IMG/VR virus record: IMGVR_UViG_3300027573_000779
Coordinates: 124,001 to 188,000 of that record
Direction: 5' to 3' (one strand)
DNA: 64,000 nt
The notes under the pieces were generated by a model. It did not search any database. It saw only the letters and a list, made by a program, of their open reading frames with translations, and was not told where the DNA came from. Numbering within the stretch: position 1 is the first letter of the stretch; each line of letters begins with the position of its first letter. Shown here one piece after another: positions 30,600-60,826 of this stretch. The position numbers and the translations under genes are program-made.

Positions 30600-31176
30600 G
30601 TAGTGTTTTTAAGCTAAATTAGTTTACTTTTCTGTGGGTGTTTGCTTCCTCATCCCAAACAAACAGGCTCTTGCCAAGTATCGTAATTGACCCATTGACG
30701 CATTAGGAGCTTGTGTGTGTCTTTGCTAATGGTTCCACCGTCAAGTAGGAATTTAATAAACTCTGCAATGGTCATTAAAGGATAATCTACTGGCATGTTG
30801 ACTGCATTGTTATAAGTGGCAACGTAAACGCCTACAATGGCGCTTGCCCTATCGAGGTCAAGATATTGATTATTCATGGTCTAATCCTTTCAGATTAATG
30901 GGTTTACTTGGCTTCTGGAAAGGTCATCCAGAGCTTATGCAAAGCAGTCATAGTATTAGAGAAACCTTGACACACATCGTCAACCAAATAGAACTGTAGC
31001 TTGCCAAGGTCTGTATCTATTTCCATTCCTTCACTGCTAGGTATTTGAGAACAAACCCTAGCGCCAACCGTATTGAATTTCTCCATGAGGGTTTTGACTT
31101 CTCCCCTAAGAGCTTTGATATCGTCTTTTATAGAATTCATGCCACAATCCTACTCTACACCTGCCTAAATGCAAAC

Positions 31177-31204
31177 AAAAAAGGGAGGATTTTTTCTCCT
31201 CCCT
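31177..31204 (-). terminator. Rho-independent terminator
   Basis: AGGGAGGA/TCCTCCCT stem with T-tract on the - strand, just after 31226..32416. Confidence 0.85.
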
Positions 31205-31225
31205 ATATTGCTCTCCTACAATGAC

Positions 31226-32416
31226 TTAGGAATTAATCACTAGTCTACTTACCTTGGTTTGTTTGTTCCCCTTCCATTCTTCATGAGCCTTAACTGTAAA
31301 AGTAGCATTGACCATGGTACCCATAGGCACATTGACGTTTGTTCCACTCTTCCAGATAAGCCTAGAGCCATCATTAGCGCTAAAGGAGTGTATATAGGTG
31401 TAACCGTAAGCAGAATCAAACCCAGTAGACTTTAGGTAGGTTATTGGCTCATTCTTAACCCGTTTACCGACTAGTCCAAAGTAGTTTTGAGTAGCTGCAA
31501 TCCTAGCTCTTTCAATTGAACGCGCATAGAACTCAGGGACAAAGGCCAGAATACCCGTATTTTTCCATTCTACAGCCTCACACTTGCAAACTACTAACAG
31601 ACTATGCTCAAAATCTGTAATGGCCTCAGAGTCTTTGTTTTCTAGGGTCTCAATAACATACTCCTTTGCCTTACTAGCTAGAATAATATCGCAATCCTCT
31701 GGTCTATGGTAGTCAACGCCCAATCTCCAATCTTTTGCAGGGTGCATCCAGTCAGACGCCCTATCCTTAGTAGCAATACCTAGGGTTTCTTGTGCTTTCT
31801 TGCTCCCTATAAACCCAAAAAACCTTATAACGCACGCTGCATAGGCCAGAAAACTCTCTACGTGACACAGTGAACGCCCGCAACCATACCCACCTAAGCC
31901 TTCTGATATTTCGCAAGCTTCTCTAAGTGAGAAGGCTAATTCTGCCATAGCTGCCAATCTTTCGGGACTATTGTGTCCCAAAAAATCACGTAAGCAATTG
32001 CGCCCTACCATCTTACGTGAACCGTCATCATGCAAAACAATAAAGGTTTCTATCCTATATCTAGCTTGCTTGCAATGGTCACAGTGTTGCGCACCCGTTC
32101 TAAACTCTCCTAATTCCGCCTCAATTCCGGGTGCTTTCCTTAGGATGTTTCCTTCCTCTGTATGCTCTACTACAGCCGCAAGCGTCCAACCATTAAACTT
32201 AGGCGCTTCCCCAGAGACTTCTACAAAATGATATCTATCTACTCTGACAACTAGGCCAGAAATATCGTCCTTAATCTGTATGTCCTCCGTTCTGCCCGTC
32301 TCATTAAAGACAATTAAAGGGCAACCCAGTTTGATAGCTTTCTTGTTAAGCTTGGCAATTTGCTCCCTAAGAGAGTAAAGGTTGCCCGAATAGACTCTAT
32401 AAACGTTAGAATTCAT
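31226..32416 (-). CDS. Conserved phage hypothetical protein (central CDHC zinc motif, possible C-terminal OB fold)
   Basis: 396 aa intact ORF; CDHC...GRNCLRDFLG. The family is familiar from phages but I cannot name it. Confidence 0.7.
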   Translation of the reverse strand: MNSNVYRVYSGNLYSLREQIAKLNKKAIKLGCPLIVFNETGRTEDIQIKDDISGLVVRVDRYHFVEVSGEAPKFNGWTLAAVVEHTEEGNILRKAPGIEAELGEFRTGAQHCDHCKQARYRIETFIVLHDDGSRKMVGRNCLRDFLGHNSPERLAAMAELAFSLREACEISEGLGGYGCGRSLCHVESFLAYAACVIRFFGFIGSKKAQETLGIATKDRASDWMHPAKDWRLGVDYHRPEDCDIILASKAKEYVIETLENKDSEAITDFEHSLLVVCKCEAVEWKNTGILAFVPEFYARSIERARIAATQNYFGLVGKRVKNEPITYLKSTGFDSAYGYTYIHSFSANDGSRLIWKSGTNVNVPMGTMVNATFTVKAHEEWKGNKQTKVSRLVINS

Positions 32417-32470
32417 GTTTAAATCCTACTCTAGTCGCCCATGACACACAATATCTTTTTTATCCTTATG

Positions 32471-32632
32471 TCAAACTACTTCTTCCTGTTGTTCTTCCTG
32501 TTGTTCTTCCATCTCTTTCTCACCTAGGCAATCATGACACAACCCGTCAACGTCATTAATGTCAAGTAAGATGTGTATATGAAACACTTGTCCACATTTG
32601 GGACATGTAAAGATATTAGACAAAGAATACAT
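32471..32632 (-). CDS. 53-aa zinc-finger protein (missing from the ORF track)
   Basis: Manual translation: MYSLSNIFTCPKCGQVFHIHILLDINDVDGLCHDCLGEKEMEEQQEEQQEEVV. Confidence 0.6.
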   Translation of the reverse strand: MYSLSNIFTCPKCGQVFHIHILLDINDVDGLCHDCLGEKEMEEQQEEQQEEVV

Positions 32633-32675
32633 GAGAAGTTAGGGTTTAGTCACCTCACCCCTTTTTGATTTTAGG

Positions 32676-34072: not shown

Positions 34073-34125
34073 AGGCTCAATATACATAATCTTTTTTGCG
34101 CCGCAAGCATTATTTTAAAATAAAT

Positions 34126-34161
34126 AAAAAAAACCCCTAAAGCATTGAGCTTCAGGGGTTT
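34126..34161 (-). terminator. Rho-independent terminator
   Basis: AAACCCCT-A-AAGC / GCTT-C-AGGGGTTT stem with T-tract on the - strand. Confidence 0.75.
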
Positions 34162-34195
34162 ATGGTGGGAGGGGGGAAGGAAACTTAGTAGGTTT

Positions 34196-34939: not shown

Positions 34940-35451
34940 CTCCCAATAATAAAGAGTTTTTTTATCTTGTCAAGCTTTTCTCAAAATGCCTTTGCAATAA
35001 GCCACAACGTTTTGAATCAAAAAAGACTATTAAAGCTATAAAGCTCTCAATTAGCCATCGGGGATAGCGCAATTTTAGCCAAAGAAATTTCCAAATCGGC
35101 GCTAATAAGCTTTTCTTATTTTTAATATACTTCGTTGCTGCCCAACGATTTAAAACCGCAATAGGCTTGTATCCCATGGGGTAAAGCCAGATAAAACGTA
35201 ATACTTCTGTCATTATTCCCCATTGTATCAGAAATTTTTACGTTGGCAAGAGGGGGGACCTCCCCAATGGGCTAAACGTAGATTGGATATGGATAATTTT
35301 CTTTTTGCTCTTGAGTTAGAAAGATTTGCATCCAAAGACTGCCAGCTTCAGAGACTTTTATATCTTGTGGAAGCTGCCCTTTGCCTAGCGCCACGAAAAA
35401 GTCTTGTCTTCTAATGAGATAAAGCTTCATATGCTCAAGCGCCGCAGGGCT

Positions 35452-35646
35452 TTATGAATTATAATCCCTTTCACAAGACCGACTACAAAACACCTTTTCT
35501 TGCATCTCGTTCTTGTTTTTATCGTCCCTGTTAATACCATACCTGAATTTAGCAGGTTGGCCGCACCACGCGCACTCACCCTCTGCTTTTTGGCGCACAA
35601 CGTTAAAACGTCCAAAAGGGTCTCTTGAGATTGATACTGTATTCAT
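35452..35646 (-). CDS. Small zinc-finger protein (TRASH-like)
   Basis: CAWCG...VFCSRSC. True start MNTVSISR, 7 nt after TTGCAA-16-TATTAT. Confidence 0.65.
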   Translation of the reverse strand: MNTVSISRDPFGRFNVVRQKAEGECAWCGQPAKFRYGINRDDKNKNEMQEKVFCSRSCERDYNS

Positions 35647-37781: not shown

Positions 37782-37870
37782 ATGCTCAGTCGCCGCAAGG
37801 GCTTTTTGATTGTTTTTTAAATTGTTTAACTTTTAAGATTATACAATATCTTTTTAAACCTGCAAGACTT

Positions 37871-38826: not shown

Positions 38827-38863
38827 AAGAAAGATTATATATAGTCTTTTTAAAAAGACAAAG

Positions 38864-38889
38864 AAAAAAGCCCCCAAAAGGGGGGCTTT
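38864..38889 (-). terminator. Rho-independent terminator
   Basis: AAAGCCCCC/GGGGGCTTT stem with T-tract on the - strand. Confidence 0.85.
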
Positions 38890-38996: not shown

Positions 38997-39057
38997 TTGA
39001 AAAGCTTAACAGATTTTTTCCAAAAAGCAACAATAAAGCCCTTCGGCGTCTGAGAAT

Positions 39058-39453
39058 TTAAGCTGCAACGGGTTCTGCCACTTCAGTTACAGGAATATTT
39101 TCTGTAACGTGCTCAGTCGCAGGCTGTTCGGGAGCATTGCTCACTCCTGACTTTTCAGCCGCTCGCGCCACCTTTTTGGCCAGTTTTTCAGCCTCTTTAG
39201 CCGCCTCTTCCTTGTGTTTATTTTCCCAATAAGCCTTTTTCGAAGCTGAGATTTTGTCCCTTCCAGCTTGGCTCATCTTACTTCCCTTGGGTCGCCCCTT
39301 TCGAGTTTGAGAAGGAGAAGGAAGAAGGCTAGGAAGAGTTGAGGGAATATTAATTCCACTCATCAACTGATTGTATTCAGACTGCTTTACCGCAATCTCT
39401 TCCAGCAACTTTGCCGCTCGCAAGTGAGTTTCGGGCGTTAACACTATGTTCAT
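39058..39453 (-). CDS. Small basic DNA-binding-like protein (AT-hook plus MSxAGRxKI motif)
   Basis: N-terminal coiled coil, RKGRPKG, KMSQAGRDKISASKKAYW, and a Lys/Ala-rich tail. Confidence 0.6.
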   Translation of the reverse strand: MNIVLTPETHLRAAKLLEEIAVKQSEYNQLMSGINIPSTLPSLLPSPSQTRKGRPKGSKMSQAGRDKISASKKAYWENKHKEEAAKEAEKLAKKVARAAEKSGVSNAPEQPATEHVTENIPVTEVAEPVAA

Positions 39454-39582
39454 TTTGTTCTTTCTTTCTTTTTAATTGTTTTTAAAATTTTGTCTTTAAC
39501 TGACAACACCCATACGTTAACACTACTTTTTAAACGTGCAAGACTATTTTTTTTCAATAATCAGTCTTAAGCTAATAACTAA

Positions 39583-40350: not shown

Positions 40351-42138
40351 AAATTGGATTATAAATAATCTTTTTAAAAAAGCAAGCCCCCATTTTTTAG
40401 GTGGGGGCCGGGGGGGCAGGGCTACTTATGGGAGAAGTATTTACATACCAACAGGACTATCAACAGGCACACACTCTCCATAATAATTTAAATTGGGCGT
40501 TTGAAACTCAAGGTATCCAACCTTGTAGCGGTAATGTTCTTTAGGCTGTTCAAGAGGAACGAATTCTAGGTAAGTAATTTCCTCATATCGTTTTGAGGCC
40601 AACTCACAAGCTTGGCACATCAAACCATTTTTGCGCCCTTTATATTTCTTTGTATCTTGCTCGGAATTAAGTATTTGGAACAAAGACGAATATATTAAAG
40701 CGTGTTCAAACTTTTCTTGCGTACTCCAAAAGTAAGCAAGTGTAGGAGTCAACCAATGCAATTCGCCATTGGTGCCTTCGTGGTTGTAGAAAGAGAAGTA
40801 TCTTTCTTGAAGTTCGATAGGATTGCTGTCTTCGATTGCTATTGCAACGTGTAAACCAAAGTTTTGACGATACAACTTTTGCATACGCACTCAAGCGCCG
40901 TGGGGCTTATAAAAAAGAAACAGTTTTCCTGAACTGTAAATTTTAAAAACTCTGGTGCTTGATTTATATACTCATACTATCAAGGATTTTTCCTAAGTCA
41001 ACAGGAATAATGGGGGAACAACCTTATTTTTTTGGACTTTTTTAAGATTTTTTGCTCAATTTTGAGACATTTTAGGGTTTTTTCCTACTCTCAAGCGTCG
41101 ATGAGCTATTTTATAATTTCAGCTAGAGGCCAAGTGGTTTCGTCCATTTCATAATTTTTATCTCCTTTTGAGAACCAGAATGTCCCTACTGAGCTACTGC
41201 AATTAGTAAAGCCGTGTGCGCGACAAGCATCAAAGACCGCCTGAACATCCTTGTCTTTATCCCATTTAAGTTCTGTACGTATTGCTGTGTATATTAATTC
41301 CCATTCTCCAGCACAAGCAACGACTTTAGAATCAATTCGAAACTGATTCATTTTGTGGATTTGATAGGCCGCGACTGCAATAACAATACTATCGGGCATT
41401 TCAACTAGTTCCATAAAGAAAGTTTACAATCTGAGGGGCTTTTAGTTTGATAGAATGATTACTTTTGTGTACCTATCTTTGCACAAGTCATTCGCTTCTT
41501 CACTTGTAAGACTTTCATCAATCTCTTTTCCTTTTACACTGACTGCATTGACAAGTTGAACTATCCTATAACGCTTATCCAACAAGTTTTTTTGCAGCGT
41601 AACAGTGGTTTGTTTGTTATTCATAAACACAAGAATACAATATCTTTTTTAACTCTCAAGAACTTTTTGCGCCGCCTCAGAGCATTATTTTAGCTTTTTC
41701 TTCCATAGTTAAAACCGCCGCGTGAATACTTTTAATGTCTTCAAAGTCAAGGAACACATCTGTTTGATTACCTATAATTGTTACTCTATCTGGCCGCACT
41801 ACAGCAATATTTCCAACATTAATAGGTTCAAAAATAGTATTATCCGCCTCTATCAGTTCATCAAGGGTGACGCTTTGAACTACTTGGCCACAAGAGCACA
41901 GTTCTACAACTTTTGTTTTTCGTCTAACTAGAATAAATTTTGAGGTTCCCACATCTCCTAATACGCGATTGTAACCTATTGAGGACAAACAATTTAGGAG
42001 CGCCGTTAAATGTGATTTACTTTTAATTGTAAGTTGGACCGCATCGTTCATATAGGAGGATTATACAACATCTTTCTATTAAATCAAGGTTTTATGGAGA
42101 AATGTTTCGAACTACTATGCATTGCCAAGTAGCATGTA

Positions 42139-42171
42139 TGTATTTACATTGTATTTACTTTGTATTTACAT
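42139..42171. repeat. Three tandem 11-bp near-palindromic boxes TGTATTTACWT
   Basis: 42139-42149, 42150-42160 and 42161-42171. Confidence 0.85.
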
Positions 42172-42857
42172 CCTTTAACTCTATATTATATTATACCATT
42201 GTCAGTTAACGCCTCAATATACGCCTTGGCATACACTCTATGCCTTAACCTCAACTCTTTAGTGTCTTCATTGGCAAGCTTTATCCTCAGAGAATTAAGC
42301 TTCTGCAAAGAACTTCTAACGCTATCGGTGATAGTAGAATCGTCAATATCGGGCATGACCTTGTGAGAGTGCTGGCTTAAGCTGTCAATAACTTCAGTCA
42401 GCGCCGCAATTATCTCTAAGTTGCTCATAATCAAAGTCTTATCCTTGGAACAGTCCGTCACTATAAGGTTGATAATCCTTTTTGGCCATTATCTCCTTAA
42501 CCCTTTCCTCTGTCACTTCGCGCCAACCAACGGGCAAACATTGATACCATTGACCTTTGAACTTCACAAAGTCGCCAGACGACATAGAACGGACATGTAA
42601 TTTGCAGAAAAGTGTTGATTCACAACCACTTCCAGCGTTGAAAGCCGCAAAAATGTCCTCTAAGCCCAAATTGTCATCCCACACACTGGAAAACTCTACA
42701 GTTTGCGCCGCACCAAAGGAACGGGGATATTTAATTTCAATCATGCACCCATTCTAGCAAGACTTTTTAAAGTTGCAACCCTAAAAGTTTGCCTAAAATG
42801 TAGACACCCAAGAAAAAGAATCAATTAAAGTCAATAAGAACAGCAATTAAGAGCCAC

Positions 42858-43064: not shown

Positions 43065-43069
43065 TCCCT

Positions 43070-43219: not shown

Positions 43220-43955
43220 ATTAATCTTTTGTGTTTATGTTTTCTTCTAAACCCTTAACTATACATTCTGCCCATCGTGCGCCGAACCTCTTGTCATCAA
43301 GCTCCTTATCAATTTCCTTTAGAAAGGACTGAATGTCTCTGCCTAAACCATCAGGGTAGCCGTCGCCATGCCTATAGACAATGGCTCCAGTTGAATCGTC
43401 GCTGTAACAGAAATGAATTGTAGCTCTAGTTGACATATTTGGATTATACGATATCTTTTTAAAACGTCAAGCGCCCGTTAATGGTTCAAACGTCCTATCT
43501 TTAGGCCAACGGGCTAACCTATGGTCGTTAGCGTATTTTAGCCAAGCTTCTGCTTTTTCTTTATCCTTCCAAATATTCAAGGCAATCTGGCGCATTTCTA
43601 GGGCAGTTTGTTCCTCTTGATAATGCCACATATCCCTATCATCTGAGGACTTAATGTCACGCCAAGAAATCATATGCTCAAACGCCGCAGGGCTTTAGCT
43701 TTTCGTTTTTATAGGTTTCGCGCTTAGCCAGAGAGTTTGAACTTTCTTTGATTTGGGAAACAACTTATCTAAAATATTTTCTGCTTCTTTAATGTGATGT
43801 TCAAGCGCCGCCTTTGATTGTTCTTTATACTGGTCACTGGACTGAACGAAACTTTTATATAGCTGGACAATCATATCCAATCTACAGTTAGCGTTCTCAG
43901 TTTCGCGAATAAAATCTAAAGCGTTTGTCTTCATACTCTCAAGTGTCGCAGGGTT

Positions 43956-44108
43956 TTAATTCCAAAATGCAATTCCGTGGCTAAATTCTTCTAAATGAAG
44001 AGGGTTCATTTCAAGGTCATTTAAACCATGTATATCAATGTAGGCGATAGGCAAATCATCTTTAGCGCCGTTTTTCTCCAGCAATTCTTTAAGTTCTTTC
44101 CACGTCAT
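43956..44108 (-). CDS. 50-aa hypothetical protein (missing from the ORF track)
   Basis: MTWKELKELLEKNGAKDDLPIAYIDI...; own promoter upstream and a junction element right after the stop. Confidence 0.6.
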   Translation of the reverse strand: MTWKELKELLEKNGAKDDLPIAYIDIHGLNDLEMNPLHLEEFSHGIAFWN

Positions 44109-45206
44109 AAACAAGAGAATACGATATTTTTTTTATTCCGCAAGCTTTAACTTGGGTTAATAAAAGGATTAAACTTAGACTGAGAGTCAAGATTTCTATC
44201 TAAGATGCTCTGTTGCAACATCTTAATAGCTTCAACGCAATCAGCATCTTTAGGTCCGCGCCCTTTGTTCTTTTTAATGTGATTCCAGATTTTATCTGTA
44301 GCACAACACCAAGGAAGATTTGTATTCCAATCATTGTCTTCTTTTTGGAAGCCAATACCAACTGTGCCAAACTTGGGAAAACATACAATTGCCTGATTCT
44401 TACTAACTTTAACCCGCATCAACCAAAAATCTTCATCCAATGGAGGAGTTATTAAAAGTGTGTTGCCAAAAGGTTTTGGGTCTTGAATTTTGTTTGAATT
44501 AAGTTCAATTGTAAGTTTCATATTCAGATGATACAAAATCTTTTTTAAGAATCAAGCTCTTTTTTAGCTCTTATGTCTATCCCAAATCGACAATAGCCCG
44601 CCCAAGCTGGAATGTTTGAGGCTGAACAGACCTGTAAATTATGCCACTTATGGAATTCTTTGGGCCAATACTTAGGGTCTGCAAGCACTCCTAGCCTAAA
44701 GTGTTCCCGCGCCTCATTAGGAGAATCTGCTAGAATAAAACGCCGCTGGTTCTGATAGCAACCCCACTCGCCTGTAGTCAACAAGTGTTCACTGGTAAAA
44801 GTAACCATCCATCGCTTGTCAGGGGGATACAGCTTGATATCAATTGGGTTTTCATTCATATCCCAATCATATAATATCTTTTTTAACTGTCAACCTTGAA
44901 AATCTTCTCTAGGGGTTACCTTTATCTCAAGAGGAACAACCCAAAAAACCAACAAAAGGTCGCCATTGGGAACCTCTTCGAACCGTCCCACAGTCCAATT
45001 AAAAGATTTGTAATCTGCTAGCTTTTGCATCAAATGAGCGCCGCCATCTAGCGCCCCTTGCGGACTTTTACAGTTTAAGCCATACACATAAAAAGCCCCT
45101 ACTGATAAACCTCTGAAGTATACTGCCGTATATTCTCTGCTTGGAGTAATAATTGTTTTCATTGTTTTTGTATTCTACAACATCTTTTTTAACCCGCAAG
45201 CTTTTC

Positions 45207-45998: not shown

Positions 45999-46554
45999 AT
46001 GCGCTCAAAAGCCGCGAGGCTTAGTAATTTTTTGGTTAACGCCGCAGGGCTTAATTGCCCTTAAAGCTATAGACAAGATACACTATCTTTTTAAACTGTC
46101 AACGCTCTATGAAAGGCTATGCTGTATATGAGCTAAGTATGAGGCTCTTTTAATCTTCTTCTCTGCTAGGTAAGCTGCCTTTCTCTCCCTTTTGTTTGGG
46201 AACAAAGAAAGCATAACGTCTTCGTGATTTGTGGAATTACCTAATGCGTAAAGAAGATTTTCGGTTTCAAATTGGGTTAATTGAAATGTAACTTTCATAT
46301 TGAATGCAAACCTGTTTTCTCAAGCTCTTCAGGACCAAAAGCAACATTTAACATATCAACCGTAACAGAATAGCAACCGTTTTCGGGTATTAGTCTATTT
46401 ACAACCCCACATTGACCTTTCCATGCGCCAGTGAGGATTCTAACCCTGTCGCCAATATTAAAGGATTGCTGTTCTTCTTTTGAGTCTTTATTCATCTGTG
46501 GGGATTATACAAAATCTTTTTAAAATGTCAATGCTCCAAAGCCGCAGGGCTTTT

Positions 46555-46712
46555 TAATATGAATTGAATATCTGTTGTAATTTGGTCCGCAATTGGGTCC
46601 CCAATTTTAACCAACTGTTCGGTCCCAAATGTGATTTTCAACTTGTTCTTGAACTTGGTCCCTAATTTCGTACCTAACTTGGTCTTCAAGTGTATCCCAA
46701 ACTTTCTTCCCT
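46555..46712 (-). pseudogene. Decayed DQVW-type gene
   Basis: VWDTLEDQVRYEIRDQVQEQVENHIWD with no start codon, then a frameshift. Flanked on both sides by junction elements. Confidence 0.55.
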
Positions 46713-47621
46713 ATTTATGCTCAGACGCCGCAAGGCTTAAAGTTTATTGGTATCACCATTACTTCAATTGGTTTAGAATGTTCGCTTGTCCCATAACCCA
46801 TCTTTAGCGCCGCCGCCCTAGATTTAAATAACTGGTGCGTGTTAGGCAAAAGCCATCTCTTTCTAAGTATATGTTGTGCTTTTTTATGGTGATAACTCTC
46901 ACACCAAGAACACCAAGGAATTTTCATATAGCCAGATTATACAAAATCTTTTTTAAGTGTCAATAATTTCCCGCCTATTGATAATCTTTATTCCCGAATG
47001 ATGACAGTGTGGACACTTTTCCTCTGCAACTTCCCCCGTTACTTTAAACTGTGTTCCACAATCACAAGTAAAAGGAGCATGTCTGTTAATATCAGAGAAA
47101 ACATCTACGGGCGCGTCCTGAAGGGTATAAATTCTTAAAAGACAGTCGCCTCCTTTCGATTGAGCTTCTTGTTCTAAGCCGCAACCGGGACAATGAATGA
47201 TAACTGTATCGAAACAACCCATATTAAGAGTATACTAAATCTTTTAAATTGTCAATCGTATTTGTTGAGCATTACGCTCAGGGCACATTTCTTTCTTACA
47301 CTTCATATATACGTCGAGTTCCACACTTAGGACACCAACCGCTTTCGTCAAGGTGACGCGCCTTACAAGTAGGACATATTTCTGTGGGATTTTCAAGCTT
47401 TTGGACAAGACCGCCCACCGAAACAATGCTCTTGTCTTCAATTTCTGCCTTCTTACGCAACCATTCAATTTCCGCGCTCTCCGCACTTTTAGCTGTCAAT
47501 TCCCTTACAATTTGCATAAGTGTTTGAAACGCAATGTTTTTGGTTGTACAAAGTCCATAAGACCTATTAACAAATTGTACTCCGTTGCGTTCAAAAGCTT
47601 CTTTAATTTCTTGTTCGGTCA

Positions 47622-47855
47622 TCACGATTCCTTTGTAACATAAGGCCAGTAGATAATATACTCTAATCCCATATTGTCTTGGCAGTATTGTTTTAGTTTC
47701 CTGTGTTTCTTGGCTAAATCAATCACCAACTGAGGATTGCCTGTTACAATTCCCATACATTGGCGACCAAACATTCCGCGCCCCGAATAATCATAGCGCA
47801 CTTCGCCGCCAACTTCTTCTGAGATTTCTTCAATGATTTTTTTGTTGGTTGTCAT
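47622..47855 (-). CDS. Conserved phage hypothetical protein (YSGRGM family)
   Basis: YDYSGRGMFGRQCMGIV...DNMGLEYIIYWP. True start MTTNKK; the longer N-terminus in the track is a shadow of the upstream repeat gene. Confidence 0.7.
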   Translation of the reverse strand: MTTNKKIIEEISEEVGGEVRYDYSGRGMFGRQCMGIVTGNPQLVIDLAKKHRKLKQYCQDNMGLEYIIYWPYVTKES

Positions 47856-52051: not shown

Positions 52052-53435
52052 AAAAACGCATTCTACAACATCTTTTTCAAACGTCAACAATAATCCAAAA
52101 CCTCTGTAAAGTCTTGTATTTGCTTGGTGCCGCCCTCTGATTCTTTTATTAGTTTAATATAAGTTTCCTTATTAATAGTCCTTGAAGGCATACTGGCTAG
52201 TTCTAATGTAAAAATGTCGGGAGTTGATTGCGCATAACTTGAATGCCTAAACAAACAACCAGTTAGTAAATTAGTAAACTTGTAATAGCCCTCAATATAG
52301 ACCTTTGCGGTTAGATAGTAATTGTGGGGAGACAACATCTTAAATTGTTCCTTGAAGGTCAAAATAAGTTTTCATCATGCCTTTCTCTGTATCGTTCGCT
52401 TCTTGAATTAGTTTTTTGCGTCTAGCACGCCAAACACTCATTGAAGTTTCAAGTTGTGCGTTATAAGGGACGTATCCACTAGAATAAAACCCACACTCGT
52501 ATCTTTCGAGTCCAATTTTATAACCAATTTTTCGTGCGTCTGGAATCCCTGCCTTGGTAAGCTGGTCTTTAGTCCAAAATCTTTTGCGCTCTTTGTCTAT
52601 ATAAGCCGCTTCCAGTATTTCGCCTGTTTTAGGATAAACAAATTTATTCATAAATGCTCCAAAACACCAGAATACAGCATCTTTTTAAAATGTCAATGCT
52701 CAAGCACCGCAGGGCTTCAGTTCTAATCTAATCCCTTCAATTTTGTTTTTTTCAGTTAAATACCACCCCTCTATTATTAAATCAATATCAATGGTGGTCT
52801 TGGGACCAAAGATAGTCCATTTTTTGTTTTCAGCCTTATCAAACACAAGTAATGTATTACCATAGTTCATAACGTTAGCTTTGTCCCCTTCAATAAAAGG
52901 AGCGTTTTCTATAGTCTGACCTAAATCGTCTTGGATTGTTTTAATTAAGAAAAACATATCAGCCACCACCCACCCTTCGCCCAAATGATTATTTTTTGGG
53001 TCCTTTGGTTTTTGACCTATAGACCAAACAACAATCTTAGAGATGCTTTTTGATTTCATCTGGACAAACTTCTAAAAGATAAATTTTTGTTAGTTTATAA
53101 ATACCTTCAATTAATTGTTCTCTCTGAGCTACAACTTTGTCCACTTCCTGTTTTACTCTTTTGCCTTCTTTTAATGGCAAAGAAGCAAAATATCTAAAAT
53201 GACCGTCATAAGAACGTATATAGGCATAACCTTCTCTCCCTAAAAATTTTGGAACTGCAAACCCAACCCCACAAAGAAAACCCGGAAATTGGTCATATTC
53301 CCAAAAAAACATCCTTTTTTCGTGTTTTTTGCCGTCGCCATTACATTCTATACAACGGTTTTTTTCAATAGTCCCTGTTCCTTTACACTCTTTACACTCT
53401 CTCTTATTACTTAAATTCCTCATATCATAACTCCC

Positions 53436-53896: not shown

Positions 53897-54766
53897 TTAG
53901 ATTGGTTCTTTGATAAGTTTCGTATACATCAATAGGGTCGCTGGCTGTCCAAGGCATTAAAATAAAATTAATTCCAAATGGGTGATACATTTCCATTTTT
54001 TCTTTGTCTGTTGCCTCGTCTAAATAGCCAGCCACATACCAATCCAGCCCTTCAAATGGGTAGGCCCAGTTTTTTCCTTTCTTATCCGGCCTGTGTCCTA
54101 CGACATAAATTCTATCTCTGTCGTTTCGTTTATAACGCGCCCCTTCCCATTGGTCCGAACCAATCTTTACTTTAACTGGTTGCACGTCAAAACACCCACA
54201 TTGTTCTAACCATTCTTTTAAAGTCATATGCTCAAGCGCCGCAGGGCTTAGTTTATTCTAATTCCCACCATTCGGGGTCCACTTCTGCCAAAGCTTTACC
54301 TAAGTCACTAGGAAAAACAACGGCAATATCATAAACGGGATTTTCTTTACCTTCACTATCTGATTCTGTCAAACTCAAACCCCTATGATTCAGAGTTAGG
54401 TTAGAGACTTTCTTAAAAAATGTTTCTAATTTGGCTTTATCGTGTTCTTTCATATGCTCAAGCGCCGCAGGGCTTAGTTTTATTTATAATAAGTCTGAAT
54501 ATAGGCATCTGCCACCTGTTTGAAATAGCTAAAAATTCGCTCTTTTGTTTGTTCTGTTCCGTCGCCGCTCATATTAACAGTTACGCCTCCAATCTTGAGA
54601 GGCTTTACTTTACCATCCCTAAAAAGCCTCAAAAAACGCGAAACTGTCATCAGTTCAACCCACCTACGTTCAGGGGTCTTGATTTCGACCTTGAACTTCT
54701 TCACCTTTGGAAGGAAGTTGGCTACCAACGTAATTGATATCATGAAACGATGATAGCGGGTCTTTT

Positions 54767-54961
54767 TTAAAAATCAAGTCGATTGCTCAAGCCGCTCCTA
54801 AAAATTTCACTTACAATTTGGTCCCAAATTTGCCCCTTAACTTGGTTCCAAGTTTGTCCTCCAATTTGGCTCCCAACTTGTTTCCAAACTTGCTCCCAGA
54901 CTTGGTCCCCAACTTGGCTCCAAACTTGGTCTATAATCCTTTCTTTAATTATTTGGGTCAT
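54767..54961 (-). CDS. DQVW-type tetrapeptide-repeat mini-protein
   Basis: DQVWSQVGDQVWEQVWKQVGSQIGGQTWNQVKGQIWDQI. Confidence 0.75.
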   Translation of the reverse strand: MTQIIKERIIDQVWSQVGDQVWEQVWKQVGSQIGGQTWNQVKGQIWDQIVSEIFRSGLSNRLDF

Positions 54962-54967
54962 AAAGGC

Positions 54968-55192
54968 TTAAATTTGGTCCCAAATTGCGTCCTCAAGTTG
55001 TTTCCGAAGGTTGTCCCAAAGTTGTTCCCTAAGTGGATTCCAAACTTGTATAACCTGCATCCAAATTGGGTCCCAAACCTGTTCATCAAGCTGACTTTTA
55101 ACTTGGTCCCCAACTTGGTCCCAAATAATCTTACGAATCTCAATATCGGTTTGGTACCAATCCTCCGATAATTTGTCTAGCATCATTTTCAT
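54968..55192 (-). CDS. DQVW-type tetrapeptide-repeat mini-protein
   Basis: IWDQVGDQVKSQLDEQVWDPIW. Confidence 0.7.
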   Translation of the reverse strand: MKMMLDKLSEDWYQTDIEIRKIIWDQVGDQVKSQLDEQVWDPIWMQVIQVWNPLREQLWDNLRKQLEDAIWDQI

Positions 55193-55514
55193 TTATTAAA
55201 ACTTTTTTAAAAATCAATCACAAAAAGAAACTAAGGAATTCTTGGTGGCAGTGGTAAAACAATTCCTAATTTAGTAAGGGCTTGTTCATCTGTATTGTTC
55301 AACCCGTTATAAATCACTTTTGTAGCTATATAAAGACACTCGGCTTGTGTCCAATCTGGAAACCTTTTCTCTAAAGAATCACAAAATCTATCCCTTAATT
55401 CTTCAACAGGTATGGGATTAGATTTAGAAACAAATGTAAAAGCAATTTTGAAAACCACGTCTGCTAAAATTTCAGAATTATCACTTAAATCTTTTAAAAT
55501 TTTTGGTGAAATTT

Positions 55515-55730
55515 TCATAACCATATTTGCTCAAGAACTTGGTTCCGAACTTCCATGAAAACGTCATTCCTTATTTGTTCCCTAGATGGGTTTCCAACAT
55601 GCTTCATAACTTGGCTCCCAATCTCAGTTCGGTCCCCAACTTGGTCCATAACGTGGTCCCAAACTTGGTCCATAACGCGGTCCCAAACTTGGTCCACAAC
55701 TTGATACTGAATTTTGGTGACTAAGCTCAA
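55515..55730 (-). CDS. DQVW-type tetrapeptide-repeat mini-protein
   Basis: DQVWDRVMDQVWDHVMDQVGD. Confidence 0.75.
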   Translation of the reverse strand: MSLVTKIQYQVVDQVWDRVMDQVWDHVMDQVGDRTEIGSQVMKHVGNPSREQIRNDVFMEVRNQVLEQIWL

Positions 55731-57061: not shown

Positions 57062-57071
57062 TTTAAAAGGT

Positions 57072-57097: not shown

Positions 57098-57251
57098 GGT
57101 TTTTTTTACCTTTACTTAACAAGCCTGCAAACCAACAAACAGGTTAATTTGCAGCGTCTTCCCCGAAGACATTTTAATGATATCAAGCCTTTCTAAAAAG
57201 TCAATCTCTCAAGTGCCGAGGGGCTAAGTTTTCGCTAAGTGCGCCGCAAGG

Positions 57252-57951: not shown

Positions 57952-58176
57952 TTATTTTTGGTCCCAAACTTGGTCCTCAACTTGGTCCCAAACTTGGCCC
58001 TGAACTTGGTCCCAAACTTGGTCCCGAACTTGGTCCCGAACTTGGTCCCGAACTTGGTCCCGAACTTGGTCCCGAACTTGGTCCCAAACTTGGTCCCAAA
58101 CTTGGTCCCAAACTTGGTCCCGAACTTGGTCCCGAACTTGGTCCCAAACTTGGTCCTCAACTTGACCCTCAATCAT
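57952..58176 (-). CDS. DQVW/DQVR protein encoded by a near-perfect 12-bp tandem array
   Basis: About 17 units of GACCAAGTT(T/C)GG; ATG at 58176. Confidence 0.7.
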
Positions 58177-58189
58177 AAAGATTTAGTTT

Positions 58190-58315
58190 TTAATTCCTCA
58201 ACTTGCCAATAAACTTGGTCTTTAATTTGTTACCATTAACTTGGTTCCAAACTTGGTCCCCAACTTGGTTCCGAACTTGGCCCCAAACTTGGCCCCAAAC
58301 TTGGTCCGCGTTCAT
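58190..58315 (-). pseudogene. DQVW-type gene with a frameshifted 3' part
   Basis: MNADQVWGQVWGQVRNQVGDQVWNQVNG, after which the repeat continues in another frame (QIKDQVYWQVEE). Confidence 0.55.
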
Positions 58316-58344
58316 AAAAGAAGGGTAGCCCCGCAAGGCTACCC
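58316..58344 (-). terminator. Rho-independent terminator after the DUF932 gene
   Basis: GGGTAGCC/GGCTACCC stem followed by TTCTTTT on the - strand. Confidence 0.85.
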
Positions 58345-58353
58345 CAAATTAAC

Positions 58354-59358
58354 CTAATTTTTTGGCAAGGTTAAGTCCTGTAGGAGTAAATCAGTAGCCC
58401 TCTGTTTGAGATTAGCTCCAGTACCAAGTAGCGCCGATTCAAACTTTGCTTCCTGTCTATTAGCTCCTTCTTCTGCTCTGGTGCTTCTTTTTTGGTCAAC
58501 AAATTCAGTTATACTGTTTAGGTAATCATACCTTGTCTCGCCTACATTCCCTGTGCCACGCTGAAAAAGTTCTGTTACCTGCTCTCGAATATTCTCAGTT
58601 CTTGAGCTACATTCATAAAGTCCAGTTTCCTTATTCAATTTCCCCGGAAACAAGGTTTCATTGTACCTAACTACCTCTTCTTCATTGCATTTCTGGTCTT
58701 TGAGCATTTTCAAGACTAGCTCCAGCCGCCCAAAATAACCATAAGCAATTCCGAGCGCCCTTTGAACTTCCTCTTTGTGACTCTTAAAACTTTTGGTATG
58801 GCGCATCTTAACCTGATTCTTTGCGCCTTTTAGGGCTGCATTAAGGGTGTTTTGACAGACTACCCGCACCGCTACATTCTGCATCCATACTGAGTGCGTA
58901 CCATCGTGGCTTGAAATCATCAAAATCCACTTGTCCATCTTATCGCTAGGGTCAATATACATGGTTTCTGGCAGCTTGGCCATAATCCAGATTTTGCGCC
59001 CCTCTCTTAAAGACCCCGCAGTCTCATAAACTGCCTGACCTTCAGAAATAACCGAATCAAAAAATTCAAAAGCTTCCTCGTTTTGGACTGGCGTATATCG
59101 ATTACCTACCACTCCCAGTTTAACCCCATTGTCCTCCCTTACAACAGCTTTATAATCTTCAAATTCAGAAAGACCACTCTCTGTCTGAATAAAAATTGGC
59201 TCTTTGCGAACCCTCCAATCCAAATGCGCCAATTGGATTGCTTCTTTGGCTGTAACTGTTCCTTTGACAACGCTTCCCAATGAATGCCAAGGAACTATAT
59301 TATTACCGCTAAAAGTTTCCGCAGTGCCGTCTTCTCTAATTGTTATTTCGTGTGACAT
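58354..59358 (-). CDS. DUF932 (TIGR03299-like) phage/plasmid protein
   Basis: PWHSLG, YTPVQNEEAFEFFD, YETAGSLREGRKIW, SSHDGT, VRVVCQNTL and RHTKS. Confidence 0.92.
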   Translation of the reverse strand: MSHEITIREDGTAETFSGNNIVPWHSLGSVVKGTVTAKEAIQLAHLDWRVRKEPIFIQTESGLSEFEDYKAVVREDNGVKLGVVGNRYTPVQNEEAFEFFDSVISEGQAVYETAGSLREGRKIWIMAKLPETMYIDPSDKMDKWILMISSHDGTHSVWMQNVAVRVVCQNTLNAALKGAKNQVKMRHTKSFKSHKEEVQRALGIAYGYFGRLELVLKMLKDQKCNEEEVVRYNETLFPGKLNKETGLYECSSRTENIREQVTELFQRGTGNVGETRYDYLNSITEFVDQKRSTRAEEGANRQEAKFESALLGTGANLKQRATDLLLQDLTLPKN

Positions 59359-59846
59359 ATTGTTTTACAAGTTTGTTTATCTGTCTACAGCATAACAAAT
59401 CTTTTTAAACCGTCAACAGGTTTCTTTTGAAAGTCTCCCCACTGCTTTTTCAAGTGCAACCATCTTAACCTCAAGTGGTTGCCCAGTCAAAAAAGCAACC
59501 AAAAGAGATTGAGACAAATCTTCTATTATCACATCAGCCTCTTTTGGAGGAGTAGTACGAGTTTGTGTCCTAATTTTAGACAGGCAGTTCTTCATTGTTT
59601 CTTTATAAAAATTACGCTCTCTTCAAGCCCGAAAGCCCAAAGAAAATTATTCCAACCTCTGTGTCCTAGTCCGCGCATTTTCCAGACTATTCTTTTAGTA
59701 TCATGAGCATTTTTGATTAACCAGTCTTGTTTTTGTTCTCTAGACCAGTTAACGTTGTATATTTCATCCACAGGAAAGAATCTTGTGTTGTCAGCTAAAA
59801 AATCTTCAATTTCTGGTAAATTTGGCATTGCTCAAGCGCCGCAAGG

Positions 59847-60035
59847 CTAGTTTATTTTTAGGTCTCTAACTTGGTCCCAAATTTGTCCCACAACTTGGCT
59901 TCTAAATTGGTCCTGTATTTGGCTTTGGCCCCAAATTTGTTTCTTGGTTTCATGCCCAACTTGGTCCCAAATTTCGCTCCAAATTTGGTCCCAAACTTGG
60001 TCCCGAACTTGTCTTTTTATTAAATTACTATTCAT
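59847..60035 (-). CDS. DQVW-type tetrapeptide-repeat mini-protein
   Basis: [20 protein letters not shown]; ends KIN*. Confidence 0.75.
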   Translation of the reverse strand: MNSNLIKRQVRDQVWDQIWSEIWDQVGHETKKQIWGQSQIQDQFRSQVVGQIWDQVRDLKIN

Positions 60036-60328
60036 TCAAATAATCATCGGGATTAACTTCTTCGCCAACATCGTCTTCTTCAGTTAAAGGAGAACCACAA
60101 ATAGCACAAATTTCTTCTAAAAGCGAATAGCTGCTATGCGCTCCGCCATCTCCCTCTTGAACCAATACTTCAACCAGTTTATAGACGCGCCAATTGACTA
60201 ACTCTGCTAATACTGGCAAGTCTTCCTTGGTAGGAGGCCAACAAGAGGCGCAAAGGTCTAAATGTTGGTCGTTAAGTCTTATTCTAGGCATCTCTCAAGC
60301 GCCGAGGGGCTAAGTTTTCGCCGCAGGG

Positions 60329-60535
60329 CTAGTTTATTTTTATGTTCCAAATGTGTTCCACAACTTGGCCTTCTACTTCTTCCCCAACTTCTTCCCAAAC
60401 TTGGCCCCAAACTTGTTCAAAAACCTGTTCCCAAACTTGACCTTCTACTTGGTCCCAAATTTGTTCCCCAATATGGTTATGAACTTGGCTCCTAATTTGG
60501 TCATCAATTTGCTTCCTAATGTTATCTTTCGTCAT
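60329..60535 (-). CDS. DQVW-type tetrapeptide-repeat mini-protein (MTxDxI subfamily)
   Basis: MTKDNI...EQIWDQVEGQVWEQVFEQVWGQVWEEV; ends KIN*. Confidence 0.75.
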   Translation of the reverse strand: MTKDNIRKQIDDQIRSQVHNHIGEQIWDQVEGQVWEQVFEQVWGQVWEEVGEEVEGQVVEHIWNIKIN

Positions 60536-60826
60536 TAACGCGCCGATTTAAATTCTGGTATTTCCATCCAATGCGCCCGAACTGAAGGTAAAGCTATTGT
60601 ACTCGTATAAGTTAAATCATTGTCCGTCATAACAATAATTTTTGTGCCTTGCTGCTCCCATCTTCCAGTAATTTGCTGCCATCCCTCTTTCCGTTTAAGA
60701 GACCAAAGAACGGTGGTTTTTTGTGGAGGTTTCTCTTTCTCGAAATTCTTCCAAATCATAAAAACGATGATAATAAAAGTTTTTAAAATGTCAATGCTCA
60801 AGCGCCGCAGGGCTTAAGCCCTTTTT

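What the first reader, a model, noticed from the sequence alone, without database searches (positions are those of the whole stretch)
31141..60794. One gene, one promoter, leaderless mRNA: about 30 related early promoters with a 16-bp spacer
Most array genes have TTG(ACA/ACG/ACT/CAG/CGG/CAA/ATT) - 16 bp - TA(TAAT/TCAT/TCTT/GAAT/TTCT/TTAT), usually followed by ATG 6-9 nt later, with no room for a Shine-Dalgarno. The +1 would fall at or next to the AUG. The spacer itself is conserved (t/g-TTAAAAAGAT-a-TTG), unlike ordinary sigma70 spacers, which suggests common descent by copying or binding by a spacer-reading factor. Leaderless translation could keep these genes expressed while SD-dependent host translation is shut off. 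The layout is analogous to, but not the same sequence as, T4-type PeSL mobile promoter cassettes. It also corrects many starts in the ORF track.
Basis: partly seen in the sequence, partly recalled or inferred. Interest (0 to 1): 0.66.

Follow-up and report, generated by a model that had tools for sequence, protein, structure and literature searches.

The report
Promoters fused to start codons
A 209-kb uncultured groundwater phage drives about a third of its small accessory genes from near-identical promoters placed so that transcription should begin at the ATG itself, a layout kept in a distant relative, so here the promoter seems to do the job of the ribosome-binding site.

Summary
On the minus strand of the window, 41 sites fit TTGACA, a 16-bp spacer and TATAAT. 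The spacer carries an A5 run at a fixed place. This is far above shuffles, and it is specific to that strand and to a spacer of exactly 16. At 32-33 sites an ATG that opens an ORF lies 6-9 nt after the -10 box, most often 6, which puts the A at +1. That is about 40% of the roughly 82 ORFs, not "most".

A second phage of 203 kb, whose shared proteins are 36-56% identical, has 69 such promoters. At eight orthologous genes the flanks are randomised, but TTG, the A5 run, TAnnnT and the ATG stay in register. The spacer is therefore under selection and is not a trace of recent copying. It lies where the RNA polymerase beta' zipper reads the spacer (the Z-element).

No RNA data exist, so transcription starts are inferred. 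The idea of escaping an SD-dependent shut-off is not supported. The phage's late genes are also SD-poor, and a relative with SD-rich genes puts a strong SD before the same gene. The likeness to PeSL cassettes is only partial. The host is unknown. I rate this a new variant of known kinds: leaderless phage mRNAs and multi-element early promoters.

The parts
31138..31174 (-). Promoter-ATG unit without an A-run (TTGCAT, 16 bp, TAGGAT, 6 nt, ATG at 31140), just after a terminator
   Evidence: ORF 30904-31140, 78 aa
34070..34973 (-). Three leaderless units. -35 starts at 34106, 34394, 34973; ATGs at 34072, 34360, 34939
   Evidence: all three have 6 nt between -10 and ATG; ORFs of 290 aa (ArdC-N plus zincin peptidase), 54 aa and 182 aa
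35211..36138 (-). Three leaderless units. -35 starts at 35249, 35681, 36138; ATGs at 35213, 35646, 36103
   Evidence: distances 8, 7, 7 nt; ORFs 83, 64, 60 aa
36868..37481 (-). Three leaderless units. -35 starts at 36904, 37219, 37481; ATGs at 36870, 37182, 37447
   Evidence: distances 6, 9, 6 nt; matrix scores 30-32 bits; ORFs 68, 93, 74 aa
38186..38467 (-). Two leaderless units. -35 starts at 38222, 38467; ATGs at 38188, 38433
   Evidence: distance 6 nt in both; ORFs 105 and 69 aa
40348..40385 (-). Leaderless unit of the GP88-family gene (ATG 40350)
   Evidence: distance 7 nt, 255 aa; the orthologue in G004 keeps the layout
41622..42778 (-). Three leaderless units. -35 starts at 41659, 42087, 42778; ATGs at 41624, 42051, 42744
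   Evidence: distances 7, 8, 6 nt; ORFs 60, 124, 101 aa
43434..45199 (-). Five leaderless units. -35 starts at 43470, 44143, 44555, 44893, 45199; ATGs at 43436, 44108, 44521, 44859, 45162
   Evidence: distances 6, 7, 6, 6, 9 nt; ORFs 71, 50, 124, 104, 90 aa
46493..47255 (-). Three leaderless units. -35 starts at 46531, 46963, 47255; ATGs at 46495, 46927, 47222. The last has a 15-bp spacer with A4
   Evidence: the best matrix scores (36 and 34 bits); ORFs 66, 68, 89 aa
48449..49058 (-). Two leaderless units. -35 starts at 48485, 49058; ATGs at 48451, 49024
   Evidence: distance 6 nt in both; ORFs 129 and 70 aa
49941..52087 (-). Four leaderless units. -35 starts at 49980, 50768, 51241, 52087; ATGs at 49943, 50731, 51205, 52051
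   Evidence: distances 9, 9, 8, 8 nt; ORFs 142, 64, 137, 152 aa
54741..56061 (-). Three leaderless units. -35 starts at 54777, 55217, 56061; ATGs at 54743, 55183 (or 55186), 56027
   Evidence: ORFs 87, 71, 98 aa
60757..60794 (-).
   Evidence: distance 7 nt, 74 aa
37838..37865 (-). Same-family promoter with a 56-nt leader that ends in motif 2 and the ATG at 37781
38834..38861 (-). Same-family promoter just after a terminator; the ATG 7 nt later opens only a short frame
39003..39541 (-). Two weaker family members (39030 and 39541). The latter lies 60 nt before the ATG at 39453, across an A-rich leader
40974..41001 (-). Family promoter with an 89-nt leader to a motif-2-like element and the ATG at 40884
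46075..46102 (-). Family promoter with a 76-nt leader to a motif-2 variant and the ATG at 45998 (DUF6927 protein)
52669..52696 (-). Family promoter with a 17-nt leader, the only one with a clear GGAG before its ATG (52651)
57177..57204 (-). Family promoter with a structured 115-nt leader before the RNA ligase gene (ATG 57061)
59389..59416 (-). Family promoter with a 30-nt SD-less leader before the DUF932 gene (ATG 59358)
35432..35452 (-). Motif 2 (21 nt, starts at the upstream stop codon), followed by T and then ATG
37783..37803 (-). Motif 2 inside a 5' leader, followed by T and then ATG
40888..40908 (-). Motif 2 variant with a compensatory stem change (CAC/GTG)
43675..43956 (-). Two motif-2 copies (43675-43695 and 43936-43956), each directly before an ATG
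46002..46738 (-). Three motif-2 copies (46002-46022, 46532-46552, 46718-46738). The middle one abuts the -35 box at 46531
52697..52717 (-). Motif 2 abutting the -35 box of the promoter at 52696
54229..54475 (-). Two exact motif-2 copies (54229-54249 and 54455-54475), each filling the whole gap between a stop codon and the next ATG
59829..60815 (-). Three motif-2 copies (59829-59849, 60292-60312, 60795-60815). The last abuts the -35 box at 60794
31182..31204 (-). Intrinsic-terminator-like hairpin at the downstream end of the array
34131..34161 (-). Strong terminator-like hairpin (13 pairs plus a T-run)
38867..38889 (-). Terminator-like hairpin directly before the promoter at 38861
58322..58345 (-). 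Terminator-like hairpin after the DUF932 gene

Best explanation
The array is a block of small accessory genes, presumably early, in a novel 209-kb phage. The host's primary-sigma RNA polymerase is expected to read a family of strong promoters with three elements:
- a -35 box, TTGAC(A/T);
- a spacer of exactly 16 bp, with an A5-G-A block that falls at about -24 to -18;
- a -10 box, TAnnnT.

In three quarters of these promoters the -10 box is followed after 6-9 nt by the ATG of the gene. The usual start point, 7 nt after the -10 box, purine after pyrimidine, is then the A of the AUG or a base or two before it. The mRNA has no leader and no Shine-Dalgarno, and translation would start on the 5'-terminal AUG.

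Such initiation needs the AUG at the 5' end of the RNA. Each independently translated gene therefore needs its own transcription start, which explains the dense promoter spacing with almost no terminators. Genes without a promoter mostly overlap or abut the stop codon of the gene before, which would allow translational coupling. Others follow a second conserved element, motif 2.

The A5 block is a functional promoter element kept by selection. Most likely the polymerase itself reads it, either like a Z-element through the beta' zipper or through the shape of the A-tract DNA.

Shown: the motif statistics, the geometry, the strand and position bias, and the conservation in a distant relative. 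Inferred: that these sites fire, where transcription starts, the early timing, and who reads the spacer.
For: - **Enrichment.** 76 sites against 24.8 expected. 46 with A5 against 1.7 expected. Specific to spacer 16 and to one strand.
- **Geometry.** 39 of 60 genome-wide hits have an ORF-opening ATG 6-9 nt after the -10 box, most often 6. Chance for an ATG in that 4-nt range is about 7% by base composition (my estimate).
- **Start-site rule.** The base before the ATG is T or C in 15 of 20 promoters (G000) and 34 of 40 (G004) of the 6-nt class, with A at +1. This fits the pyrimidine(-1)/purine(+1) preference for start sites, which I take from general knowledge.
- **No SD.** SD-like 4-mers occur before 10% of array genes, equal to the control level of 10-13%.
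- **Relative G004** (202.7 kb, found through a 38%-identical protein). It has 69 same-type promoters on one strand, again specific to spacer 16. The ATG lies 6 nt after the -10 box in 38 of them.
- **Orthologous promoters.** Eight gene pairs, 36-56% identical in protein. Flanks are 32% identical, spacer positions 5-9 are 97%, other spacer positions 45%, and TTG and TA...T are 8 of 8.
- **Protein N-termini.** Four protein alignments begin at residue 1 of both partners. One pair shares its first five residues, MIQNL. This supports the promoter-proximal ATG as the true start.
- **Contrast with an SD-using relative.** L130 has a strong SD before the orthologous gene. 81% of its genes have an SD and none has a -10 box fused to the ATG.
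- **Few terminators.** They are at chance level inside the array.
- **Spacer position.** The A5-G-A block coincides with the spacer segment -24..-18 read by the beta' zipper in T. aquaticus, E. coli and B. subtilis polymerases (PMC3173786).
- **Precedents.** Thermus phage phiYS40 makes most of its middle and late mRNAs leaderless (PMC3594737). A TANNNT box about 12 nt before the start codon marks leaderless genes in bacteria (PMC3160421).
Against: - There is no transcript evidence. The only public runs that hold this DNA are three DNA metagenomes, and no RNA run was found.
- The host is unknown, so neither its promoter preferences nor its capacity for leaderless translation could be checked.
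- A 16-bp spacer is suboptimal for E. coli sigma70 (general knowledge). Its meaning here is open.
- Only about 40% of the array ORFs have such a promoter. Nine family members carry leaders of 17-115 nt, so leaderless expression is not the only mode.
- Weak structure in the first 40 nt is shared by genes without a promoter, so it does not discriminate.
- My gene calls are simple ORF rules, not a trained gene finder.
Confidence: 0.72

Rival explanations
1. The conserved spacer block is the binding site of a phage-encoded or virion-delivered protein, not of RNA polymerase itself. Such a protein could activate the array or shut it off later, somewhat as MotA reads a box in T4 middle promoters.
For: The block is as conserved as the invariant hexamer bases in two phages. 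Across IMG/VR it occurs densely only in these two genomes. Looser relatives (L129) have TTGACA, 16-17 bp, TAnnnT, 8 nt, ATG without it, so it is specific to this lineage, as a co-evolving phage factor would predict. The core TTTTAAAA is palindromic, as the consensus itself shows.
Against: No candidate factor was identified. The -35 box is fully kept, whereas the MotA box replaces it in T4 (PMC2988021). The position matches a known polymerase contact. Lineage specificity could equally reflect a shared host.
Confidence: 0.25
2. The promoters resemble each other because they are recent copies of one mobile promoter cassette, as with T4-type PeSLs. In that view the spacer similarity is shared ancestry and not function.
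For: There are many copies in a region of small ORFan genes. Five promoters genome-wide are directly preceded by the same 21-nt GC-rich motif. Public assemblies break at these repeats.
Against: Sequence directly outside the motif carries almost no information. Orthologous promoters in a phage with 36-56% protein identity keep exactly the motif positions while the flanks are at 32% identity. Every loose end I traced to its sequence (the cluster at 46507-46552) is a paralogous promoter or motif-2 copy of the same genome, and both joints have sides of only 23-25 nt, so none is a recombinant. Most promoters lack an upstream stem-loop, and terminators are at chance level.
Confidence: 0.1
3. Leaderless mRNAs are a takeover device. 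They keep phage genes translated while SD-dependent host translation is shut off.
For: There is a precedent in outline. phiYS40 infection raises IF2 and lowers IF3, which favours leaderless phage mRNAs.
Against: The phage's own late genes are SD-poor and are not leaderless through a -10 box. A shut-off of SD-dependent initiation would therefore not separate phage from host in any obvious way. A relative in an SD-rich genome uses an SD for the same gene, which points to matching the host. No phage S21 or IF3 homologue was found.
Confidence: 0.1
4. The sites are promoters, but the adjacent ATG is not the start codon that is used. Translation would begin further downstream, or the transcripts would serve the next genes.
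For: Nothing specific. Starts are unverified, and some promoters of the family do have leaders.
Against: The ATG opens the ORF in 39 cases at a sharply peaked distance. Orthologous proteins align from residue 1. The same register holds in 38 to 49 cases in G004.
Confidence: 0.05

Closest known systems
Leaderless middle and late mRNAs of Thermus phages (phiYS40)
   Same: A large lytic phage in which a whole class of genes is transcribed from promoters placed so that the mRNA begins at the start codon (PMC3594737).
   Different: There the host is Thermus, a phylum already rich in leaderless genes. Here the genome is 38% GC, the promoters have a full consensus -35 box plus a conserved spacer block, the genes look like the accessory (presumed early) class, and the host is unknown.
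Bacterial leaderless genes marked by TANNNT about 12 nt before the start codon (Actinobacteria, Deinococcus-Thermus)
   Same: The same geometry: a -10 box 6-9 nt before the ATG and no SD (PMC3160421).
   Different: Those promoters usually have weak -35 boxes and no spacer consensus. Here the promoters are near-identical and carry three elements.
T4-type PeSL cassettes (early promoter plus stem-loop)
   Same: Dense sigma70-like early promoters among small ORFan genes in a plastic region. A few promoters are preceded by a GC-rich repeated element.
   Different: PeSLs pair each promoter with a terminator stem-loop and drive SD-led genes, and recombination between them was shown experimentally. 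Here only 5 promoters have the upstream element, it is a 3-bp mini-hairpin and not a terminator, no shuffling was seen, and the genes are leaderless.
T4 early promoters with UP, -35, TGn and -10 elements plus extra consensus
   Same: Phage early promoters carry more conserved information than host promoters, including positions outside the two hexamers (PMC2988021).
   Different: Here there is no TGn motif in register, the spacer is 16 bp, the extra information is an A5 block in mid-spacer, and the start codon is fused to the promoter.
Z-element of T7 A1 and A2 promoters, read by the RNA polymerase beta' zipper
   Same: A short A-started spacer segment at -22..-18, within the tested window -24..-18, contributes to promoter opening in three bacterial polymerases (PMC3173786). 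The A5-G-A block occupies the same positions.
   Different: The T7 sequences are AACCT and AACAT and their consensus is loose. Here the block is a strict A5 run. No test of a zipper contact was possible.

Membership tests
Primary-sigma (-35/-10) bacterial promoter | TTGACA-like and TATAAT-like hexamers at a spacing of 16-18 bp, on the gene strand, upstream of genes | tested here: met
   consensus hexamers, 16-bp spacing, 60 minus-strand against 8 plus-strand hits, located between genes
Primary-sigma (-35/-10) bacterial promoter | Transcription initiates about 7 nt after the -10 box | not testable with these tools
   No RNA run holds this DNA
Leaderless gene | A -10 box ends 5-9 nt before the start codon, so the 5' UTR is 0-3 nt | tested here: met
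   distances of 6, 7, 8, 9 nt in 20, 8, 7, 4 cases; 32-33 units in the window
Leaderless gene | No Shine-Dalgarno is used; the start codon is AUG | tested here: met
   There is no room for an SD. SD 4-mers occur before 10% of array genes, which is background. All 39 units were found by looking for ATG only. GTG occurs at the same distance in at least one G004 promoter
Leaderless gene | The mRNA 5' end maps to the start codon and the protein starts there | tested here: inconclusive
   Only indirect evidence: orthologous proteins align from residue 1. No 5'-end or peptide data
PeSL cassette (T4-type phages) | Each early promoter is coupled to an adjacent stable stem-loop that terminates transcription | tested here: not met
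   Terminator-like sites are at chance level. The upstream motif is present at 5 promoters only and forms just a 3-bp helix
PeSL cassette (T4-type phages) | Recombination between cassettes shuffles ORFan genes between close strains | tested here: inconclusive
   only fragmentary contigs. The loose ends I traced to their sequence are paralogous copies of the same genome, both joints have sides under 30 nt, and the holes in run X3 prove nothing
Z-element promoter (-10/Z/-35) | A sequence-specific contribution of the spacer at -24..-18 | tested here: inconclusive
   Position and selection are met. Function is untested
Z-element promoter (-10/Z/-35) | The effect depends on the beta' zipper of RNA polymerase | not testable with these tools
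   Needs in vitro transcription with zipper mutants

The most novel reading that the evidence does not exclude
In this phage clade the ribosome-binding site may be largely replaced by devices that put the AUG at, or within a few bases of, an RNA 5' end. There would be three interchangeable gene-start modules:
1. A three-element promoter fused to the ATG (G000, G004, and looser forms in L128 and L129).
2. A tRNA or tRNA-like element whose CCA end is followed by ATTT and then ATG, so that tRNA processing would release an mRNA with a 4-nt leader. This resembles mitochondrial tRNA punctuation (G004, L128).
3. In G000, a conserved-loop mini-hairpin (motif 2) that sits between a stop codon and the next ATG. 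It may be a cleavage site or an operator.
Probability: 0.25. Interest if true: 0.8.

Novelty: new variant of a known kind. Interest (0 to 1): 0.6.

Why it matters
If transcription really starts at these ATGs, this phage lineage is a clean natural case in which one DNA element sets both where the RNA starts and where the protein starts. That would explain why its small genes each carry a promoter.

It also offers about 130 natural variants, in two genomes, of a promoter with a strictly conserved mid-spacer block. This is a ready-made data set for asking how RNA polymerase, or a phage factor, reads the spacer, which is still poorly defined.

For annotation, it shows that longest-ORF and SD-based start calling will systematically misplace starts in such phages. 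It also shows that a phage's gene-start signals carry information about the translation habits of an unknown host.

Tried and rejected
- **Close relatives among cultured phages.** None by DNA. A DnaE-like protein matches only at 30% identity or less. PHROGs were blank for most structural proteins.
- **Host identification failed.** A composite promoter pattern over 185,579 species genomes gave 10 single hits in unrelated phyla, with no clustering. The Atlas look-alikes of the phage sigma factor and of an aminotransferase are almost all viral clusters.
- **Promoter-only DNA patterns in IMG/VR.** They gave chance singletons. The relative was found through a protein instead. A DnaE-based relative, a 109-kb contig, has no such promoters.
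- **RNA evidence.** No RNA run was found. Read laying gave contigs only.
- **Rfam on the whole window.** Nothing found.
- **Direct comparison with T4 early promoters from the T4 record.** Simple patterns found few sites and the stretch contains N, so I rely on the review text instead.
- **Motif 2 as a terminator or long hairpin.** Rejected: RNAalifold gives 3 pairs at -2.6 kcal/mol.
- **Motif 2 as a sigma54 or ECF-type promoter.** Rejected on spacing, by inspection.
- **Phage-encoded S21 or IF3 as translation modifiers.** Absent.
- **5' structure as a mark of leaderless genes.** It does not discriminate.
- **TGTGTAA as a late promoter.** Not enriched genome-wide, so I keep it only as a lead.

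Full report
**Setting**

The window is bases 124001-188000 of a 208,933-bp IMG/VR virus record, rated complete by CheckV. GC content is about 38%.

The record encodes:
- a DnaE-type polymerase, a DnaB helicase and a class II ribonucleotide reductase with an intein;
- thymidylate synthase, and a 5,468-aa protein with a tape-measure domain;
- subtilases;
- its own small sigma-70-family protein.

It has no close cultured relative, and most structural proteins match no PHROG. The same DNA occurs in one groundwater and two freshwater-sediment metagenomes. No RNA run holds it. The host could not be named.

**The observation**

All genes of the array lie on the minus strand.

I first defined sites by the hexamers alone, TTGNNN-N16-TANNNT, so that the spacer is not part of the definition. 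Genome 158-206 kb then holds 76 sites against 24.8 +/- 5.1 in dinucleotide shuffles. 46 of them carry AAAAA in the spacer against 1.7 +/- 1.3 expected.

The excess is absent at spacers of 15 or 17 bp and on the other strand. Base counts in the spacer of these unbiased sites give T-T-t-A-A-A-A-A-G-a-T at spacer positions 2-12.

A weight matrix finds 60 minus-strand hits genome-wide and 42 in the window. One window hit is A-rich coding sequence.

The distance from the -10 box to an ATG that opens an ORF is 6, 7, 8 or 9 nt in 20, 8, 7 and 4 cases, with only isolated cases elsewhere.

The coordinates 31141-60794 bracket the window's share of the family, which also runs on to genome 205 kb and into 5.7-24 kb.

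**How many genes are served**

With simple ORF rules I count about 82 ORFs inside the stated coordinates:

| Gene start | ORFs |
|---|---|
| Own promoter fused to the ATG | 32 |
| Overlaps or abuts the stop codon of the gene before | 21 |
| Preceded directly by a second conserved element (motif 2) | 11 |
| Short gap of 6-25 nt | 5 |
| None of these | 13 |

One further unit with a 15-bp spacer (ATG 47222) and one without an A-run (ATG 31140) bring the count of promoter-ATG units to 33-34.

Nine more promoters of the family have leaders. These tend to serve the larger, enzyme-like genes: RNA ligase with 115 nt, DUF932 with 30 nt and DUF6927 with 76 nt.

'One gene, one promoter' therefore holds for about two genes in five. 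About eleven longest-ORF starts begin at a TTG that is part of the promoter and should move to the ATG.

**Why leaderless is the best reading**

With the -10 hexamer at -12..-7, six intervening bases put the A of the ATG at +1. In the 6-nt class the base before the ATG is a pyrimidine in 15 of 20 promoters (G000) and 34 of 40 (G004). This fits the known preference for starting at a purine after a pyrimidine, which I take from general knowledge.

There is no room for an SD. SD-like 4-mers before array genes are at background: 10%, against 10-13% at control positions inside genes.

Terminator-like sites are no more frequent than in shuffles, and only four look convincing on the gene strand. Transcripts probably run on through downstream genes. 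On such RNAs only the first AUG is terminal, which gives a simple reason why each independently translated gene has its own promoter. This last step is inference.

**Comparative evidence**

A 701-aa array protein led to a 202,704-bp phage with terminal repeats, G004, at 38% identity.

G004 has 69 promoters of the same design on one strand between 78 and 161 kb, again only at spacer 16. The ATG lies 6 nt after the -10 box in 38 of them and 5-8 nt in 49.

Eight genes with such promoters are orthologous between the two phages, at 36-56% protein identity. Four of the protein alignments start at residue 1 of both partners, and one pair shares its first five residues.

Across these eight promoter pairs:

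| Region | Identity |
|---|---|
| 30 nt upstream of the -35 box | 32% |
| TTG of the -35 box | 8 of 8 |
| TA...T of the -10 box | 8 of 8 |
| Spacer positions 5-9 (the A5 run) | 97% |
| Other spacer positions | 45% |

The A5 block is therefore held by selection at orthologous sites. Recent copying cannot explain it.

In all of IMG/VR the composite pattern is dense only in G004. The window's own record is left out of that search.

**What the wider clade shows**

A VWA-like array protein has further relatives.

- In L130 (GC 31%) the orthologue is preceded by AGGAGA. 81% of L130's genes have an SD-like 4-mer and none has a -10 box 5-9 nt before the ATG.
- In the G000 array the figures are 10% with an SD-like 4-mer and 40% with such a -10 box.
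- L129 has TTGACA, 16-17 bp, TAnnnT, 8 nt, ATG units without the A5 block.
- L128 has a GTGTAAT-type box 5-8 nt before many ATGs.

G000's own late genes on the plus strand have neither a -10 box at fixed distance nor much SD: 25% have an SD-like 4-mer, and their upstream regions are A/T-rich and G-poor.

Gene-start signals in this group thus track the genome, and so presumably the host. The simplest reading is that G000 and G004 infect a host that relies little on SD and accepts 5'-terminal AUGs. No phage S21 or IF3 was found.

**The spacer**

With a 16-bp spacer the A5-G-A block lies at about -24 to -18. In T. aquaticus, E. coli and B. subtilis polymerases the beta' zipper contacts the spacer around -21. 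The sequence at -24..-18, the Z-element (AACCT in T7 A1), aids promoter opening and can even stand in for the -35 box (PMC3173786).

T4 early promoters are also known to carry consensus beyond the standard elements (PMC2988021).

I therefore favour reading by the polymerase itself, or an effect of A-tract geometry on a short spacer. A phage-encoded reader stays a live rival, because the block is lineage-specific.

**The PeSL comparison**

PeSLs are early promoters coupled to terminator stem-loops, and they recombine to shuffle ORFan genes (PMC2839356). The setting is similar here, but the defining features are not met:
- Five promoters genome-wide (three in the window) are directly preceded by a repeated GC-rich motif.
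- That motif is no terminator.
- Laying public contigs on 5.9 kb of the array showed only assembly breaks at paralogous repeats. There were no recombinant joints.

**Motif 2**

A 21-nt element with consensus AAGCCCTGCGGCGCTTGAGCA occurs 16 times on the gene strand and once on the other.

It starts at the stop codon of the gene before. It is followed either by T and then ATG, in which case it fills the whole 21-26-nt gap, or directly by the -35 box. In three or four cases it ends a 56-89-nt leader.

RNAalifold sees nothing stable. A 3-bp helix (UGC with GCA) around an invariant 9-nt loop is nonetheless supported by covariation:
- 47 of 48 cells are paired;
- six cells show changes on both sides (CG, AU and UA variants);
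- none of 500 shuffles reaches the observed covariation score;
- the signal collapses when the partner columns are slid.

A conserved-loop mini-hairpin one base before an SD-less AUG suggests a protein-bound operator or a cleavage site. I could not decide between these.

**Verdict**

The promoter and leaderless interpretation is well supported by sequence geometry and comparative conservation, but not yet by RNA data. The spacer is functional. The shut-off rationale and the PeSL analogy are weak.

This is a new variant of known kinds (leaderless phage transcripts and multi-element phage early promoters) in a new phage lineage with an unknown host.

Noticed in passing
L120 and L121 (G004, about 132-151 kb, minus strand); also L128:8294, 9118, 13657: In the relative G004, about 17 tRNA genes alternate with small ORFs of 58-105 aa. 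In at least 12 cases a CCA end is followed by ATTT and then the ATG; the 10-mer CCAATTTATG occurs 11 times against 0.38 expected. Six of these elements are ARAGORN tRNAs and one more is called by Infernal. The rest have T-arm-like sequence but are not called as tRNAs. tRNA processing would leave an mRNA with a 4-nt leader.
   Followed up: partly
window 35432-60815, 14 copies (see parts); also L009:9051-9071 and L003:4061-4081: Motif 2, a 21-nt element that runs from a stop codon to one base before the next ATG or to a -35 box. It has a covariation-supported 3-bp stem and an invariant 9-nt loop. It was not found in G004 (five or fewer mismatches). Its function is unexplained.
   Followed up: partly
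window 54818-55703, 57958-58307, 59958-61198 (minus strand): Arrays of a 12-nt tandem repeat, up to 17 copies at 91% match, lie inside several small array genes. In the ATG frame they encode tetrapeptide repeats of the type Q-V-W/R-D. This is a family of repeat mini-proteins of unknown function. All three frames are open in the purest array.
   Followed up: partly
window 18461-19162 (minus strand): A phage-encoded sigma-70-family protein of 233 aa, ECF-like with regions 2 and 4. All its nearest clusters are viral. It is a candidate late sigma factor.
   Followed up: partly
G000 genome 43846, 69522, 82082, 92970, 93349, 97169, 99572, 112928 (plus strand, outside the window): TGTGTAA preceded by a T-run lies 8-35 nt before several structural-gene ATGs. 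A similar GTGTAAT box sits 5-8 nt before ATGs in relative L128. It may be a late promoter for the phage sigma factor, but the 7-mer is not enriched genome-wide.
   Followed up: partly
L130 (IMGVR_UViG_3300032163_000001, 185.6 kb): A phage that shares the VWA-like gene at 51% identity has strong GGAGG-type SD sequences before 81% of its genes and no -10 box fused to a start codon. This is a natural contrast within the group.
   Followed up: partly
window 32417-32480 (minus strand): Upstream of the 396-aa gene there is a decayed family promoter: TTGACA, a 20-nt spacer that still holds the A-run, and a ruined -10 box followed by a 3-codon frame. A newer TAGGAT box then sits 6 nt before the real ATG. 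It looks like promoter turnover in place.
   Followed up: no
window 3-7649 (plus strand; the ORF starts outside the window): The end of a 5,468-aa ORF. It has a minor-tail (tape-measure) domain, weak metalloprotease hits and weak sigma region 4 hits.
   Followed up: no
G000 genome 201574-201650 (outside the window): Two family promoters sit back to back on opposite strands with overlapping -35 regions. Each is fused to an ATG, opening ORFs of 70 and 108 aa.
   Followed up: no
window 43985-44575 and 46743-47727: One sediment metagenome (X3) has no contig over these two stretches while neighbouring genes are covered. This could be a difference in gene content between strains or just low depth.
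   Followed up: no
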